From Perna viridis (lineage: Eukaryota), in NCBI GenBank assembly GCA_037379345.1, contig CM074523.1, positions 25,512,995 to 25,576,994 on the forward strand: a stretch of DNA of 64,000 nucleotides. Reading direction: 5' to 3'. Made by a program: the position numbers and the translations under genes. The notes beneath the pieces are model-generated. The model did no database searches. It worked only from the letters and a program-made list of their open reading frames with translations, and was not told where the DNA came from. Shown piece by piece: positions 17,541-59,870 of this stretch (position 1 is the first letter of the stretch; each line of letters begins with the position of its first letter).

Positions 17541-17933
17541 GGCAAAGGCAAAATGATAACATACTGGCTGACTGGGGCTGGAACTCCAGGTTCAATTAAT
17601 CAAAGTCCCGACAGGAAATCTTGGACAGAACGAGATGAAGATGAGGACGTGACAACAGCAAATGAACCGAGCTCTTTTCGACTGAACAGCCAGTTCGCAG
17701 AGTCAGAGGAAGGAGTGGAACCATCAGCAGATTCGAGTCCATACCGGATGCGAGGGCAATCCATTCAGTCAGACGATAGACCAGTAATGGAATCGAGTCC
17801 ATACCGGATGGGTAGTAAATCCATTCAGTCAGACGATAAACCAATAATGGAATCGAGTCCATACCGGATGCGTGGTCAATCCATCGAGTCAGAAGATGCA
17901 AGGGAAACAATGACATGTCCAAATGATTTTTGA
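17541..17933 (+). CDS. Guanylyl cyclase terminal exon (GKGKMITYWL plus ~120-aa acidic/repetitive tail, TGA)
   Basis: tcAG acceptor, phase 0, open to TGA at 17931-17933. Confidence 0.92.
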   Translation, partial: GKGKMITYWLTGAGTPGSINQSPDRKSWTERDEDEDVTTANEPSSFRLNSQFAESEEGVEPSADSSPYRMRGQSIQSDDRPVMESSPYRMGSKSIQSDDKPIMESSPYRMRGQSIESEDARETMTCPNDF

Positions 17934-31004: not shown

Positions 31005-31823
31005 CTGAAAAAAAAAAGTTATAAGAAAGAATGTAAGAAAACTTCCCACATTTACAGCATATAAAATAGTGAGCTTCATGGCATAGAAATGGTTTTCAAT
31101 TGATAAAACGACCATTTCTGGATCAGAGGAAATTTTGATTTTACCAACTTTACATAGTGGCAGTTTTATGCTGCCTGTTAATATAGTAATGTAACATACA
31201 TAATTAACCCTAATGGAAGTTGAAGTTATTGCACACTATAGAATCTGGTTTTACCCACCATTTCCATCAGAAATGCCAGTACCAAGTCAGGACCAATCAG
31301 TGGCTTCCAACTTTCTGGTTTTTACTTTGATATTGCAATTTGAAATACAAACTTTCCTTTTTGACTACTACTTTTGACAATTGCCTGGAGTTATCAATTT
31401 GGTAATTTTGTACATGTAATTACCCTTTATATATCAATAAATGAAACATATACGGTAAATATGTTAATACCTTTATAATACCTTAATAACTGTAAATATC
31501 TGACAATTTCCTGCTGATGTTGTTATTTCTTACTTTTTAGATGGGAGTGTATTTATATTGTTCCTCTCACTCTGTCTGGCAAGCATCGTCTAATGCCATT
31601 ATGTTTTACTGCAGAGAGATTGTGACTTTTGTGAAAATCTAACCTCCACCACTCCCTCCCACATCCCTTTTTCTCCCTCCCCCAACCTATCTTTCTCTCT
31701 GCTGGCTGTTGTTCTGTCTGACACACCTCCTATTGTGCTACTAGACTACAGGGGAGAGATTGTGTCTTCTGTGAAAATTTGACTTCCATCATTCCTTCCC
31801 CTCCCCCTTTTCCCACAACTTAC

Positions 31824-31955
31824 CTTTCTCTCTGCTAGGTGTTGTTCTGTCTGACACACCTCCTATTGTGCTACTAGACTTTACTGGGGAGAGATTGTAT
31901 CTTCTGTGAGAATTTGACCTCTTTGAATCCTTCCTTCCTTTAATGCTACTCACAG
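31824..31955 (-). CDS. Gene 2 exon (VSSIKGRKDSKRS..TPSREK)
   Basis: tttcAG/GTAAGT, phase 1-1. Confidence 0.82.
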
Positions 31956-32997
31956 CTGAAAGAAAAGAGAGACATATGACAAGGTTGTAAGCTACATAGG
32001 TTAGGTTGCCATGGTTAAGCATCATGGATGTCACATGATGTCAAAGCAATACCGACTGTGTCAGAAAAAAATCTTCATTTGAATTAAGTCAATTTACAAT
32101 GACTGCAGGCCTTGACAGGTTATTCTAAATAAAAACACCTTAACTTTTAAAATAATAATAGGATAATTAATTGGATGGAGTAAATAACCAAAATATAATC
32201 ATGAGTGCCGAAAAATGCCTAGATTTAATGAGAAAGCAAAAACTGGTCTGCAAACAATATAAATCTCCATGTGTTCACGACAAGAGTAATTATATTTTTG
32301 GTTATAAACTATAACTACTTGATTATTCTATTTATCGTTAAGATTTCTCTTAGATTTATTATTATTTTTAAAATAAATTTTAAAATTTAGGTTTGGCAAT
32401 TTAATACTTGTGTTGTGATCTTTTGACTGGTGAAATTCCAATAGTGAAATTACCCAGTGTGAATTATCAAAATTTTGTACCCATGGAACATTCGATAAAT
32501 AACTGCAATTTATATAATAATGTATTTTTTTTGGTTGATGTGGACAAATACACATTTATAAGCCATTTATAAGCGAACATGTCACATTTTGCACTGGAAT
32601 GTTTCTTTAAACCAGATATTTTGTGCTTCTGTTGTTTGTTTCTAGAGGGGCTGTAAATTTGCTTGGTCACCCCACTGAATATGAGCCTATCAACTGTATA
32701 GCATTTCGAATTAACCTGAAACTCATAATTACATTTTTGTCATAACTGTATTTTCCAATGGTCATGACTTTTTTGTCCTTCAAAATATTATATACATATT
32801 AGTACAACCCCATATAAATACATTTTTTTGGTCATTTTTGTAAAACTTTAGCAGTCTTAAAACATGAAGCATCTAAATTCAATTGGGTATGTTATTCCCA
32901 AAATTTTTAATGACAAGTTCAACAAAACACTCATTTCCCTTGATTCCAGCACATTAAATTTAAAGCCTCATTTTGTCTTACTATGTGGTATACATAC

Positions 32998-33139
32998 GTT
33001 TCAGTTGAATTTTTTCCTTGGATATAAAAGGGCTAATTCTATGAGATCTGTAACTTTGGGTGTCAGACATATCTCTTCCAATGCCAGAGTCTTGCATACT
33101 CATAATACCAGAGTCTATGGTACTCATAACATCTCCAAC
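32998..33139 (-). CDS. Gene 2 exon (VGDVMSTIDSGIMSMQDSGIGRDMS..IQLK)
   Basis: tttcAG/GTATGT, phase 0-1, which bridges the flanking exons. Confidence 0.82.
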
Positions 33140-33341
33140 CTGAAATAAGACACAGTATTTACATAAAGATGCTCATAACATTTCAAACCTGAAATAAGAC
33201 AACATATTTATATACAGATTCTCATAGTACCTCCAACCTGATATAAGACACAGTATTCACAGAATCAATGGTGATCATAGCATCTCCAACCTGAAAAAAA
33301 GACACAGTATTTACATACAGATTCTCATAGCATCTCCAACC
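33123..33341. repeat. Tandem repeat, 49-53-bp unit, ~4.4 copies, overlapping the exon 32998-33139 acceptor
   Basis: catctccaacctgaaataagacacagtatttacatacagattctcatag. Confidence 0.9.
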
Positions 33342-34049
33342 AGGGTCAGAGGAAATTTCAGGAATGAGCGGTTTAAATTATTTCTCCACTCAAGTTGGGC
33401 AAAATCACACTTTTCAAAACGATCTAAAATTCAGTGAGTATGTTAAAATCTCAATTTAACCACAGAAAGTGGAGAAAAAATCTGAATCAAGAATTGGCTC
33501 CAGGAGAATTGGTTTCTCCAATGAAATCTGCCAAAACTTCGGAAAATGTAAAATGTCTGGTAAACTATTGCAGAAATTTAATTGCCATCTGATGGTTAAG
33601 TATCAGTCTTTGTAAAAATCATGCAAATTCTGTAATATGTGATACACCTCAAAAAAGGCTACACATTTTTATTTTTGTAATTAAATTACTTTATAGGTCT
33701 ATATGAAATGTATAATTATTCATTCTAATCTGTCTGTTCTTAGGAGATAATCCACAATGAAAATCCAAAGGTTTCTATTGTATTTTAGTGTCATTCAGTT
33801 TCCAATAATGAATCACATTTTGCAAATTCTTATCTGGAGTGCTACTTAAAAAATCACATATTTTTAATCACTGGCTTAGAATGGGAGAAAAAAGTATACA
33901 ATTATACAATTATAATCAGGATCAGACAAAGTACTTACTTTACTAGAGTCCAGTATACCCTTAACTCCAAAGTCATATTTGTCAATTAATATTTATTTGA
34001 GACATTCATTTTTACCTGACAGACTATCAATAACCCTAAATGATATTTG

Positions 34050-35062
34050 AACTTACCAAATTGTGACTAACCACCTTTGTTGACCTCTTAATGTCTTCCT
34101 GATTGTGACTCTCCATTGACCCAACCTGACTTTACCAGACTGAGACTATCCATTGAGCATATCTGACCTGTATGAGCTTACCTGACTGTAACTATCCATT
34201 GACCATTTCTGACCTATTACCTTACCTGACTGTAACTATTCAGCCTATTTGACCCATATGACCTTACCTGACTGACTATCCGATGAGCCTATCTGACCTA
34301 TGACCTTACCTGACTGACTATCCGATGAGCCTATCTGACCTATGTCCTTCCCTGACTGTGACTATCCATTGATCCTATCGGAACTATGTCCTTACCTGAC
34401 TGTGACTATCCGTTGATCTTATCGGACCTATGTCCTTACCTGACTGTGACTATCTATTGATCCTATCTGACCCATATGACCTCACCTGATTGTGACTATC
34501 CATTGATCCTATCTGACCCATATGACCTTACCTGACTGAGACTATCCACTGATCCTATTTGACCTATGTCCTTACCTGACTGAGACTATCCATTGATCCT
34601 ATCTGACCCATATGACCTTACCTGACTGTGACTATCCACTGATCCTATTTGACCTATGTCCTTACATGACTGAGACTATCCACTGATCCTATTTGACCTA
34701 TGTCCTTACCTGACTGAGACTATCCACTGATCCTATTTGACCTATGTCCTTACCTGACTGAGACTATCCATTGATCCTATTTGACCTATTTGACCTATGA
34801 CCTTACCTGACTGTGACTATCCACTGATCCTATTTGACCTATGACCTTACCTGACTGAGACTATCCATTGATCCTATTTGACCTATGTCCTTACCTGACT
34901 GAGACTATCCATTGATCCTATCTGACCCATATGACCTTACCTGACTGTGACTATCCACTGATCCTATTTGACCTATGACCTTACCTGACTGAGACTATCC
35001 ATTGATCCTATTTGACCTATGACCTTACCTGACTGAGACTATCCATTGATCCTATTTGACTG
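34050..35062. repeat. Minisatellite, 44/46-bp unit, ~20-22 copies, overlapping the exon 35029-35123 donor
   Basis: gacctatgaccttacctgactgagactatccattgatcctattt. Confidence 0.97.
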
Positions 35063-35123
35063 TCAACATCCTCCCCATCTCCCTGTAGCTGTTTACTATA
35101 CAATCTGTTCAGAGCTCTGTAAT
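35029..35123 (-). CDS. Gene 2 exon (YRALNRLYSKQLQGDGEDVDSQIGSMDSLSQ)
   Basis: tctAG/GTAAGG, phase 1-0; its 3' end is the first unit of the adjacent minisatellite. Confidence 0.82.
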
Positions 35124-37265
35124 CTAGACAGAAGAATTTACAATAATGTTTCAGAAAAAAAATCATATTAAAAACATAAAAGTACCTTGCTTATATCAAT
35201 AAGGTTAATCACAGTGGTTTTTTCTTCAATTTTGCATTACACATCCATATAAAAAGCCGTCTGCAAGAGCTGAATTTTCAAGACAAAGTCAGTTCCTTGA
35301 AGATCAACGTTCTACCGGGTACATATACATGAACTAATAACTGCCACATACTGAAAAATCTAATCACTCAAGACTTTTTAAACAGGAGTAAAAGTGCTGT
35401 TTGTCAATGGTTGCCAGTCTTATTTCAAAGTTTATATATATCTAATATAAATTTTCAATTAAGTTATTAATTCCTTTTTTTAATCCTTCAAATATAAACT
35501 TTCCAACTGTCATTGCACCCTTTTCTTTTATGTCAAGAAAACGCATATCATTTATTTGTTAAAGAAGCTAAATAAATCAATCATTTCAATATCTACAAAA
35601 ATGTTTTCTGTATTATTCAATAAAAAAGATAAAACACAGAAAAGCCCACTTAAAAGGAAAGATTTGTGGTCCACAACCTGCTTTTAATTACTTTTTATGA
35701 AAAATACTGTAATTGTGGACCAGATTAAACACAGAAATACATGAGATTAGTTATTTTCAATTCAATAGAAACTTGAGTACTTCTCTGTCTAAGAATCAGG
35801 CAAAATCAGAATAAGGTGTGGCACATGAAGGAAAAAATGCAGTAATTTTATTGCATTATTCAAGAATTTCTACCTCCAGAAATAACAAAGTGTTTGTAAA
35901 GTTGCTTTTTTCAAGATATTGATAGGTCAACTTTAGTTGAAATGCATAGATGGAAAAATGGAAGGAAAATTTTTTGGCACTTTTTCCACATATAAACAGT
36001 AAAAAAATATCTAAGCCACAGATACTTCAGGATAAATTTAAATAGCTTTTTGGTTGTTTTCTAGATGTATTTAATATATTTGAAGCGAAAAAGAACAGGT
36101 TTAGAATAATGATGTGACACCCACTGCCTGATTCTGATATAGAATGGTACTTAACAACTGTTTTTTTTTTTCAAACATACACAATTAATTGAAAGAGAAA
36201 TTTTCAAGGAGATGAGAGTTCAGAATTCATTATTTATATACAAAGTATAGGAAAAAGGAAAGGATTGAGAAGGTTATCAGACATCAGAGCTGCGTATTCC
36301 AAGTTTTAAAAATTAATAAGGTCAGGCCAGTCTGCTGGAGATGTTTGGTGAGGAGCAGACAGTTTCTATCATGAGCAGGAAAGAAAACCATGAGGTTCGT
36401 TTTGTATTGTAAAATACATTACTGCCTAAAGCCAAAAAGACTTCTCAGCAGATTTTAACTAACTTAGAATCCAGAAATGGTCATGACAATGAAGAAAATC
36501 AAGACTTTCATTATTTTTCACAAAAAATGATTTTCTTTCCTAATTCACATGGTGTCTCTTAATGGCCAAAATCAGTCGACTTACGCTAAAGTAGTAAGGG
36601 ATGGCAGCTCTTCCCCAAAATCACCATCTCTCTTTACTACCAGAAAACAAAACATGAATTTGCATACATTCCTTGATCAAATTTATGGGAAATACTTGCT
36701 AAATCCAAGTTAAAATTCAATTTTTCAGGTAGAAATTATTACCTGCTCCTAAAATTTGCTTGCTGAATTCTATATACTGGTATATTTAAAGTTCAGTTCA
36801 GAAATAACGCAAGAGACTTAGCCTTAGCGAGTCCACTAAGTCATTCGATATGGTGAAAAATGGGTAAGTCAAATACAACAGGAAGTTGATATTGGAAAGC
36901 AGCTGATATTGCTTACAACATATGTCCTATCTAAAGAAGGTCACATATCAAATTTGAAATCAGTCAATCCATTGGATGTCAAGGTAATTACGATAAAATT
37001 CTGATGGACAAATGGACGGACGGATAGACGAGGTTATTCCAAGACACCAGTGACTGAATGGTGGTTTAAATTCATGTACCAATAAAAATCTAGAGAAAGC
37101 AGTGTAACCTACATGGTCAATGCATAAAGCTTGGATAGAGTATTAACTATAGAAAGCTGATCAGGTTATAGAGATACCAAGTCATAATTGTAATTGAAAA
37201 GGGACATATCTCCTGTGATGTAGATGCAATATACACCATGTTTTAACTTGATATGTATTGTAAGG

Positions 37266-57578: not shown

Positions 57579-59682
57579 TTAATTACTGGTTTTGATTAAA
57601 AAAAACCGAGTGTTTGATTCTTTTTTTCACTTTGAGTTAGTTTTTCAATGAGTTTGAGTTGAAATGACCTGCATTTAACAGCTGATCGTGATGTCTCTAT
57701 CATTTGCCAGTAAAATTTTGATCACTTGAAATTAGTATAAACAAACTGTAAGAAATAATCAATCACCGATAATCCTCCAAAAAATTATCATCCAAAAAGA
57801 ATTTTCAAACACATATTCAATATTGGTACAATATGATTGTTCATTAACACTTTATAATTCAATTGCACCATTTTTTTATGGAAAAGCGCACATATTCTGT
57901 CTAAACCCATGGGTGAGATACCACTAAAGAAATCTCACAAAGCTTAAAATATGAATTTTCTTGTCTCTTTTAAGTGAGAAATTGAGATTTTATGCAGGTT
58001 CATGCACTGACCGCATATCATCAATAAATATGTCAATACATTTTGGATGCAGTATAATGCAGAATGAGTGTGCCAGGTATGTATCCCATTCATTAACTTA
58101 TTCCTAAGCTACTTTCTGGGTATTTTCTACAGATGTTGTTACCTCCCTTATATACTGTTACCAGTTACAAATTATCCTCCCTAAAAAATACTTTTTCACA
58201 ATGTTACCCTAAAATTTTTAAAATGAAACTAAAATATTTTTTTCAAGTGCTATAAAGTACAGTTTTATTGTAGTATTGATATACTTAAATTTATTTTGCC
58301 ATATAAAAAATACTTCAATACCTTAAGCATTTCAGACATGAAATAGTTTATGAACTTATTACCAACACTATCACTTCATACTTAAGTTATATAGTTAAAA
58401 ATTTATCGAAATCACATGAGTTCTTTCTCATGTAGGATGCTGCTCTACTTTAATCTACAGCTAATAACACAATGCCCAGGGTTCAGGCAATTGAAATGAA
58501 GTGTAGTCTAGTTCAATCCTATACAGTCCTCTATTACTTGGCCTAGTCGTTGAGAATTTTGAAGGAAAGGACTGAAATTCTTAATCAAAACCTGGAACAA
58601 GCTCCAAAACAGAGAAAATAAACAAAAACAAACCAAAATTATTTCATGTTGATGCTGAAAATTTATTAAAGACAATAAAAATCATAATAAGTTCATATAT
58701 CTAAGACTTTCATGTCAGTTAGGTGAATTAAAGTAGCACTTGCATTTACGGTGGTTTCAAAAATTCTTTCATTGAAGTTAGTAAATATTGAAATATAATT
58801 AATCTTGAAAATTATACATAGAGTATGAGGATACAACATTGTATTTAAAATATGCCTGAAGAAATACAGATAAAGTCGACCTTTCTACTTCTAAATTGGG
58901 TCTAAGTTGTGAAATAATTCTTTATCAGAATTATTGCCCTGAAAAGGCCAAATTTGATGGTTTTTTTGGCTGTTATAGTTGATTTCTTGAAAACCTTTAT
59001 AGAAATAAATAAAAAACTTCCATTTGATGGAATGATTCTTCAAACTAGGCATACTAAAGTCTTACAAGGGGCAAAGGTTATGATGTACAAAAATAATTAA
59101 AAGTAATTGCCCTTGAAATGATATAAATCCTTGAGGTTCATGAAGTCTATCACCATAAATATTCAATAAACTTAGCTACATGTAAGACTTAATACAAGTA
59201 ATGGGTTGGGATGTGTTCAAGGACTTTTCTTTCCATTGGTAATGCTTGAGGAAGTTATTTACGTAATTACAGAATGCCAAGTTATTCCAGAAAATGCCAA
59301 CCTTAAAAGAAAGTGTGTGCACTTCAGGAACAATAAGATATTTGAGCATTTTGGTTCACTACTAGTCCAACACTCAAAGCTGGATCTGTAATGTCCTAGC
59401 CTGTGAATGGAACAGACAATAACCATGAAGGCAGACCATCGGCACATATTATCAGAAAGGATAATTACCAATGCAACAAAAAATTCAGAAAATGACAAAA
59501 GTGGAAGTAAACAAACAGTAAAAGAGAAATGTTATGGTAAAATCCAGATTTGAAAAAGCACTTATCATAACCAAACCATAGAACTCTAGTTAGTATATTT
59601 AGTAAGCAACAATGGCTACCAACTACAACTAAGTAAGCTACATTTGAAAATATGCTACAGTATAAAGTAAGCTACAACTTCA

Positions 59683-59870
59683 AAAGCAACCATGCATTTA
59701 TCATTTGATTAATGCAACCACATTAAAAGCAACCATGCATTTATCACCTGATTAATGCAACCACAATAAAAGCAACCATGCATTTATCATTTGATTAATG
59801 CAACCACAATAAAAGCAACCATGCATTTATCATATGATTAATGCAACCACAATGAAAGCAAGCATGCAAA
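59683..59870. repeat. Tandem repeat, ~43-bp unit, ~4.3 copies
   Basis: aaaagcaaccatgcatttatcatttgattaatgcaaccacaat. Confidence 0.9.

What the first reader, a model, noticed from the sequence alone, without database searches (positions are those of the whole stretch)
33123..35123. An intron bracketed by arrays of its own splice sites: donor array at the 5' end, acceptor array at the 3' end
Seen: the phase-0 intron 35028-33140 of the minus-strand gene opens with about 1 kb of copies of exon end plus donor and closes with about 200 bp of copies of acceptor plus exon start. Only the outermost donor and acceptor keep the frame. The spliced junction reads CAG|GTT, an AGGT proto-splice context, and both repeat units are centred on AG|GT. 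Known: tandem duplication of AGGT-containing sequence is a proposed route to intron gain and expansion, and decoy splice sites can tune productive splicing through NMD. Inference: this may be a copy-number-variable splice-site decoy system, or a snapshot of intron growth from its own edges.
Basis: partly seen in the sequence, partly recalled or inferred. Interest (0 to 1): 0.8.

Follow-up and report, generated by a model that had tools for sequence, protein, structure and literature searches.

The report
Splice-site "mirage" repeats flanking one intron
One intron of a mussel-type gene is mostly made of head-to-tail copies of its own two edges, a repeat type already known from lancelets ("mirages") and human F7; it is probably tolerated rather than useful, although a distant mussel has a matching repeat in the same intron.

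Summary
The minus-strand phase-0 intron 35028-33140 starts with about 23 copies of a 44-bp unit (last 32 nt of exon A plus the first 12 nt of the intron). Sixteen of these decoys keep CAG|GTAAGG. The intron ends with four 49-53-bp copies of its tail plus the start of exon B, giving three intact decoy acceptors. Every decoy would bring in a stop codon. 65% of the intron is copied from its own edges and 14% is a dispersed repeat.

This is a known kind of repeat: amphioxus "mirage" minisatellites and the human F7 intron-7 VNTR. This scan has already found many of them elsewhere in this same genome.

The intron is old, not newly gained. A deeply diverged relative, probably a cold-seep mussel, has exon B with the same boundaries. 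That relative also has a 34-bp x 15.6 array of matching donor units in the same intron, but no acceptor array.

Decoy use is therefore untested.

Best reading: slippage-born arrays tolerated because splice-site choice depends on position. The NMD-tuning idea is unsupported. Interest is modest.

The parts
35029..35123 (-). Exon A, 95 nt. It starts in phase 1, ends in phase 0 and encodes (D)YRALNRLYSKQLQGDGEDVDSQIGSMDSLSQ.
   Evidence: Acceptor ctgtctag|AT and donor CAG|GTAAGG were read and the exon translated. Its phase fits the upstream candidate exon 60307-59924. There is no direct RNA or ortholog support. Indirect support: the L008 array units preserve a matching exon end.
33140..35028 (-). 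Phase-0 intron, 1889 nt. It is 54% donor-array copies, 11% acceptor-array copies, 14% dispersed repeat and 21% unique sequence.
   Evidence: The intron position is shared with L008.
34012..35060 (-). Donor 'mirage' array. The 44-bp unit is the last 32 nt of exon A plus the first 12 nt of the intron. There are 24 recognisable units including the authentic one. It shows a 134-bp higher-order period and decays away from the exon.
   Evidence: It is unique in the genome. The RNA is not structured (z = +1.67).
33595..33852 (.). Dispersed repeat (SINE/MITE-like) inserted in the middle of the intron.
   Evidence: more than 6000 first-look candidates in G000, and the 40 scored are about 89-91% identical.
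33123..33341 (-). Acceptor 'mirage' array. The 49-53-bp unit is the last ~32 nt of the intron plus the first 17 nt of exon B (33 nt in one copy). It has 3 intact decoy acceptors, 1 dead copy and the authentic site at 33140|33139.
32998..33139 (-). Exon B, 142 nt. It starts in phase 0, ends in phase 1 and encodes VGDVMSTIDSGIMSMQDSGIGRDMSDTQSYRSHRISPFISKEKIQLK.
   Evidence: The L008 ortholog has the same boundaries. Identity by codon position is 0.67/0.81/0.375, against 0.35-0.37 in the flanks, which indicates purifying selection. The exon is single-copy in the genome.
31824..31955 (-). Candidate next exon C (phase 1 to phase 1, ...VSSIKGRK...SREK). It is in frame with exon B.
31607..31946 (-). 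Third junction-spanning duplication. The 3' part of exon C plus its donor is copied about 133-140 nt x 3, and the donor of copy 2 is dead.
   Evidence: (copies 88% and 65-77% identical).

Best explanation
These are two 'mirage'-type minisatellites, that is, tandem duplications spanning an exon-intron boundary, added to an old phase-0 intron of a single-copy, unidentified Ser/Asp-rich gene.

Origin (inferred). Replication slippage or unequal exchange started at junction sequence that is itself a cryptic short repeat (AGGTCA / AGGATCA / AGTCAG motifs every ~10 nt). It then expanded in one- and three-unit steps. Homogenisation is still active next to the exon, and decay increases deeper in the intron.

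Tolerance (inferred by analogy). The arrays are tolerated because splice-site choice is positional. The donor chosen is the first one after the exon's own 3' splice site, by 5'-to-3' scanning or exon definition as shown for F7 intron 7. The acceptor chosen is the one nearest to exon B's donor. Decoys therefore stay silent. Any rare decoy use gives a premature stop and would be cleared by NMD.

Net effect (shown). The intron has been lengthened about three-fold from its own edges.
For: The donor unit is unique to this locus.

The authentic and second donors are identical from -32 to +26, and the RNA is unstructured. Local sequence therefore cannot tell them apart; only position can.

All decoys are out of frame.

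Exon B is under purifying selection and the intron position is conserved in L008.

A third junction duplication lies at the next exon. Eleven arrays occur in 64 kb, so the genome is repeat-prone.

Literature: in F7 IVS7 the first of 5-9 identical donors is the only one used (PMC1557585). Amphioxus mirages occur at both 5' and 3' boundaries, splicing is unaffected and their length is unstable (PMC3087553; PMC3902484).
Against: There is no RNA evidence for this locus, so silence of the decoys is an analogy, not a result.

The donor unit matches an array in the same intron of a relative whose synonymous sites are saturated. The match is 26/34 ungapped, and no shuffle out of 2000 reached the observed score. 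A purely neutral, short-lived minisatellite does not predict this.

Exon A has no independent support.

The mechanism that seeds arrays at junctions is unknown, also in the literature (PMC3087553).
Confidence: 0.68

Rival explanations
1. One reading: a copy-number-variable decoy system. A share of transcripts splices at decoy donors or acceptors, acquires a stop codon and is degraded by NMD. Array length would then set the output of productive mRNA.
For: Sixteen decoy donors are identical to the real one and three decoy acceptors are equally strong. All give premature stops. The decoy acceptors lie only 49-151 nt upstream, which is within exon-definition range.
Against: It is untested here. 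In F7 intron 7, identical pseudo-sites are functional but never compete with the first site (PMC1557585). Amphioxus mirages do not disturb splicing. The acceptor array is absent in L008, so it is not conserved. Earlier follow-ups on other loci of this genome reported use of only the first copy (AI notes that I did not check).
Confidence: 0.12
2. The donor array is a conserved functional element. It could be a landing pad for U1 snRNP that reinforces use of the upstream donor or protects the long AT-rich pre-mRNA from premature polyadenylation. It could instead be a DNA-level enhancer, since the units contain AGGTCA-n-AGGTCA, a DR1-type nuclear-receptor motif.
For: An array of matching units sits in the same intron of a species with saturated synonymous divergence. 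GTAAGG and the following TCAnAGGTCA are kept in most units of both arrays. Decayed distal units keep the GATAGTC..CAGGTAAG core best.
Against: The core-conservation measure is biased by local alignment. Similarity could arise from independent amplification of an orthologous, constrained junction: the unit lengths differ (44 vs 34) and the exon-side breakpoints differ (-32 vs -22). A strict DR1 is present in only 5 window units and 4 L008 units. Only one comparison species is available. Bivalve tandem repeats are known, from my own recollection and not checked here, to persist for very long times without a shown function.
Confidence: 0.1
3. A snapshot of intron gain: the intron was created recently by tandem duplication of an AGGT-containing exon segment.
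For: The spliced junction reads CAG|GTT, and both units contain AG|GT.
Against: Exon B starts at the same codon behind an acceptor in L008, so the intron is ancestral. The intron's 5' end copies the upstream exon and its 3' end copies the downstream exon, which is the opposite of the duplication model. The two arrays share no similarity.
Confidence: 0.03
4. Assembly artefact: the arrays are collapsed or expanded wrongly, or are not real.
For: Long tandem arrays are error-prone in assemblies, and I could not lay reads.
Against: The array has structured variants, a higher-order period and a decay gradient. Three unclassified runs of one sample, probably DNA, hold 56-81% of the sampled words. An independent metagenome contig of another species shows the same kind of array.
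Confidence: 0.03

Closest known systems
Amphioxus 'mirage' minisatellites in Adh3, troponin C, globins BflGb6/9 and PGBD5 (Canestro et al. 2002, as cited in PMC3087553 and PMC3902484)
   Same: These are minisatellite-like tandem duplications whose units span an intron/exon boundary. Both 5' and 3' boundaries can be hit. The units carry AG/GT signals. Concerted evolution occurs inside the array, with decayed units at its edge.
   Different: The animal here is a mollusc (mussel-type) genome, not a cephalochordate. Both boundaries of the same intron are hit, and the next exon's donor is hit as well. An array of matching units lies in the same intron of a deeply diverged relative. Normal splicing and length polymorphism, which were shown for mirages, were not tested here.
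Human F7 intron 7 37-bp VNTR (PMC1557585)
   Same: The first repeat element spans the exon-intron boundary, so the authentic donor is followed by identical pseudo-donors. The local context of the first and second sites is identical.
   Different: F7 has 5-9 copies and only a donor array; here there are about 23 donor copies plus an acceptor array. For F7, exclusive use of the first site is shown experimentally; here it is only inferred.
Intron gain by tandem duplication across an AGGT proto-splice site (the Rogers model, as discussed in PMC3087553)
   Same: AG|GT lies at the spliced junction, and tandem duplication is the mutational process.
   Different: The intron is ancestral and the copies are of existing boundaries. 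The arrays lengthen an intron; they do not create one.

Membership tests
Mirage minisatellite (boundary-spanning tandem duplication) | Tandem array with a minisatellite-size unit (10-160 bp in the literature) | tested here: met
   44 bp x ~21-24 copies and 49 bp x 4.4 copies.
Mirage minisatellite (boundary-spanning tandem duplication) | One terminal unit is the authentic exon-intron boundary, so the units carry the splice signal | tested here: met
   The donor unit is exon -32..-1 plus intron +1..+12. The acceptor unit is intron -32..-1 plus exon +1..+17.
Mirage minisatellite (boundary-spanning tandem duplication) | Regular splicing is not disturbed (only the authentic site is used) | not testable with these tools
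Mirage minisatellite (boundary-spanning tandem duplication) | Length instability or polymorphism between haplotypes | not tested
   No second haplotype or laid reads were available. Only indirect signs of recent turnover exist: units 1 and 2 are identical.
F7-IVS7-type donor VNTR | Pseudo-donors identical to the authentic donor lie directly downstream of it | tested here: met
   Sixteen decoys keep CAG|GTAAGG.
F7-IVS7-type donor VNTR | Exclusive use of the most upstream donor | not testable with these tools
   No reads were laid.
Intron gain by AGGT tandem duplication | The intron is absent at this position in relatives | tested here: not met
   In L008, exon B starts at the same codon behind ttattacag.
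Intron gain by AGGT tandem duplication | The intron's ends are the two halves of one duplicated exon segment | tested here: not met
   The arrays copy the adjacent exon on each side and share no similarity with each other.
Unproductive-splicing (AS-NMD) regulatory decoys | Use of a decoy creates a premature stop codon | tested here: met
Unproductive-splicing (AS-NMD) regulatory decoys | Decoy junctions are seen in RNA, and the decoys are conserved | tested here: inconclusive
   RNA was not testable. Donor-type units are present in L008, but the acceptor array is absent there.

The most novel reading that the evidence does not exclude
The donor array is not a passing by-product. It would be a long-lived, selected element, kept in the same intron in two mussel lineages separated beyond synonymous saturation. 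Its repeated GTAAGG / AGGTCA core would act, for example, as a U1 snRNP-binding platform or a nuclear-receptor-type enhancer. Mirage arrays in bivalves would then be a class of functional intronic elements.
Probability: 0.1. Interest if true: 0.65.

Novelty: new member of a known kind. Interest (0 to 1): 0.3.

Why it matters
This locus is a clean natural experiment on how the spliceosome picks one site among many identical ones. There are 16 perfect decoy donors and 3 strong decoy acceptors around a single intron, and the first two donors have no local sequence difference.

It also shows in concrete terms that introns can grow about three-fold by copying their own edges.

The match with an array in a very distant mussel raises a testable question: are some junctions hot spots for repeated amplification, or can such arrays persist for over a hundred million years?

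The phenomenon is already described (mirages, F7), and this scan has seen it repeatedly in this genome. This single locus therefore adds an example and a cross-species data point, not a new principle.

Tried and rejected
- **Reads.** No RNA or DNA reads were laid.
- **Run shares.** Shares of sampled words in possible RNA runs were 0.10-0.40. They are uninterpretable without laying.
- **Spliced model.** Exons were searched one by one, by reference. The joined A+B(+C) protein was not built or searched.
- **Exon B searches.** The exon B representative search gave only P0001. A word search with P0001 found only P0001 itself.
- **Exon A search.** The word search found no candidate.
- **Metagenome scans.** Scans with the exon B alignment and with a two-unit array pattern found nothing.
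- **Gene identity.** Pfam was run on 16 candidate exon translations; the only matches were two sub-threshold chance hits, one on exon B and one on the plus-strand cyclase repeat. The protein atlas gave no usable hit. The gene remains unidentified.
- **Rfam.** Nothing was found on 32900-35400.
- **RNA structure hiding the decoys.** Rejected, z = +1.67.
- **Donor/acceptor array similarity or complementarity.** None found.
- **L008:993 as the true end of exon A.** Rejected: there is a stop 10 codons upstream and no acceptor.
- **Gradient test.** I asked whether older distal window units are closer to the L008 unit. There is no clear trend.
- **Per-position conservation of the donor core.** It is suggestive but confounded by local-alignment bias.
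- **Array at 59682-59868.** It lies next to another donor but does not include the junction.

Full report
**What is there**

On the minus strand, a 95-nt exon A (35123-35029...DSQIGSMDSLSQ) ends in CAG|GTAAGG. A 142-nt exon B (33139-32998, VGDVMSTIDSGIMSMQDSGIGRD...) follows tcttatttcag| and ends C|GTATGT. The intron between them (35028-33140, 1889 nt) is phase 0, and the spliced junction would read CAG|GTT.

Tandem Repeats Finder gives two arrays:
- a 44-bp x 20.9 array at 34127-35060 (87% matches, score 1189, with 90- and 134-bp higher-order periods);
- a 49-bp x 4.4 array at 33123-33341.

**The donor array**

I cut the donor array at its donors and scanned it with a profile whose phase is not anchored on the donor. 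This shows 24 recognisable units reaching 34012. Each unit is the last 32 nt of exon A plus the first 12 nt of the intron.

- Sixteen decoys keep the exact 9-mer CAG|GTAAGG.
- Five keep a variant GT site.
- Two are dead.

The units next to the exon are identical to it, and the units deepest in the intron are the most decayed. The authentic donor and the second donor have identical sequence from -32 to +26. Any decoy donor would retain GTA AGG TCA TAG, which is a stop four codons in.

**The acceptor array**

This array has three intact decoys (33290, 33237, 33188), each with its own polypyrimidine tract and CAG, plus a dead CTG copy at 33340. One copy carries 33 nt of exon B instead of 17. All of them bring in stops.

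**Is it local, real and a gene?**

- Three units used as a query hit only this locus in the 723-Mb genome, so this is not a dispersed satellite or transposon.
- Exon B is single-copy.
- The middle of the intron contains a ~258-nt dispersed repeat at 33595-33852, with thousands of copies in the genome.
- The intron's make-up is therefore 54% donor copies, 11% acceptor copies, 14% dispersed repeat and 21% unique sequence.
- No Pfam family, Rfam family or atlas cluster identifies the gene. It encodes a Ser/Asp-rich, probably disordered protein.
- Phases fit across strong sites from a candidate upstream exon (60307-59924, ending in phase 1) to exon A, from A to B, and from B to exon C (31955-31824).
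- I searched the exons one at a time, by reference. The joined spliced protein was not built or searched.

**Comparative evidence**

The library-wide representative search with exon B gave one hit, P0001. It is an ORF on two overlapping, identical contigs (L008, L009) from sea-water metagenomes taken just above the animal community of the Site F cold seep. That community is dominated by deep-sea mussels (PMC9357000). The source is therefore probably a bathymodioline mussel, by inference.

Exon B there has the same length and the same AG| and |GT boundaries, and it is 54% identical in protein. Identity by codon position is 0.67/0.81/0.375, against 0.35-0.37 in the flanking intron. Two things follow:
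- Synonymous sites are saturated.
- Exon B is under purifying selection, so it is a real exon, and the intron is older than the split of the two species. This rules out recent intron gain.

Strikingly, the L008 intron upstream of exon B holds a 34-bp x 15.6 array. Its units read ...GATAGTTATAGTCTG|GTAAGGTCAAAG.
- The consensus matches the window's authentic junction at 26 of 34 positions without gaps.
- The two unit consensuses align far better than shuffles (score 26, against a mean of 6.3 and a maximum of 16; 0 of 2000 shuffles reached it).
- Apart from exon B, nothing else in the two loci aligns.
- L008 has no acceptor array.
- The 5' edge of the L008 array is not a plausible exon end, so exon A of that species is not on the contig.

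Two readings remain open, and I cannot separate them with one species:
- An inherited array kept by turnover. The intron-side breakpoint is the same (+12), and the unit join is the same (AG|GTCA).
- Independent amplification of an orthologous junction that is prone to slippage. The unit lengths differ (44 vs 34), the exon-side breakpoints differ (-32 vs -22), and the junction is a cryptic repeat of AGGTCA-like motifs.

A test for older window units being closer to L008 gave no trend.

**How it most likely works**

Shown:
- The arrays exist.
- They lengthen the intron.
- The decoys are intact and out of frame.
- No RNA structure masks them (z = +1.67).
- The two arrays are unrelated to each other.

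Inferred:
- The arrays arise by slippage or unequal exchange. The 134-bp three-unit period and the identical proximal units indicate recent multi-unit events that involve the real exon end.
- They are tolerated because site choice is positional. For the human F7 intron-7 VNTR, fifty constructs showed that identical pseudo-donors are functional but never compete with the most upstream one (PMC1557585).
- Exon definition gives the same prediction for the acceptor side: the acceptor nearest to exon B's donor wins.
- If a decoy were used, the stop codon would make the transcript an NMD target.

I worked beside those places and sent none of their letters to any search tool.

**Comparison with what is known**

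Tandem repeats spanning exon-intron boundaries are described in amphioxus as "mirages", in Adh3, troponin C, globins and PGBD5. They occur at both 5' and 3' boundaries. They carry AG/GT signals, do not disturb splicing, are length-unstable, and their cause is unknown (PMC3087553; PMC3902484). The original paper, PMC117041, is not held. This locus meets the structural criteria. The behavioural criteria (normal splicing, instability) are untested.

This scan has already reported many such arrays elsewhere in this same genome: ATM, a Slo2/KCNT channel, ZnT6, FRAS1, Robo and dystrophin. It includes notes that RNA shows only the first copy in use, and that one junction was amplified in other species too. 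Those are unchecked AI notes. The F7 lead came from one of them, and I verified it in the paper.

**Chance**

The window carries 11 arrays of score 100 or more in 64 kb. The chance that a random ~50-bp seed covers a given junction is then about 1%, and about 1e-4 for both junctions of one intron. With roughly 2e5 introns (my assumption), one expects on the order of ten to twenty double-ended introns per genome. A third junction duplication lies at the very next exon (31607-31946). Bracketing of one intron is therefore not in itself evidence for a coupled system.

**Verdict**

The kind is known, which makes this a new member in a mollusc.
- Intron growth from its edges is supported.
- Intron gain is rejected.
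- NMD tuning is unsupported but untested.
- The one point that goes beyond the known picture is the matching donor array in a very distant mussel, which deserves a proper multi-species check.

Noticed in passing
window 31607-31946 (-): Third boundary-spanning duplication in the same gene. The 3' part of candidate exon C (31955-31824) plus its GTAAGT donor is repeated about 133-140 nt x 3. Copy 2 is 88% identical, with the donor mutated to ATAGGT.
   Followed up: partly
window 33595-33852: A dispersed ~200-260-nt repeat (SINE/MITE-like) lies inside the intron. It has more than 6000 first-look candidates in the genome, and the scored copies are about 89-91% identical.
   Followed up: partly
window 32998-33139 (-) and L008 1661-1802: Exon B carries two motifs, DSGIMS and DSGIGRDxS, that are invariant between the two species. 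They resemble the DSGxxS phosphodegron recognised by beta-TrCP. That resemblance is my recollection and was not tested.
   Followed up: no
   Followed up: partly
window 17733-17897 (+): A 60-bp x 2.8 in-frame coding repeat (SSPYRMRGQSIQSDD...) lies in an open frame on the plus strand, probably the C-terminal tail of the cyclase gene.
   Followed up: no
window 59682-59868 (-): A 43-bp x 4.3 array (94% matches) starts about 56 nt downstream of a probable donor (59924|59923). It does not include the junction, so it is an ordinary intronic minisatellite.
   Followed up: partly
L008 6-182: The metagenome contig shares an old dispersed repeat family (70-78% identity, at least 20 places) with the window's genome. 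This fits a related bivalve source.
   Followed up: no
window 34012-35060 (-): Unit variants in the array would change the protein if gene conversion moved them into the exon: caatgg/cagtgg is Met/Val and tctcag/tcacag is Leu/His. The array could therefore feed coding variation into exon A.
   Followed up: no
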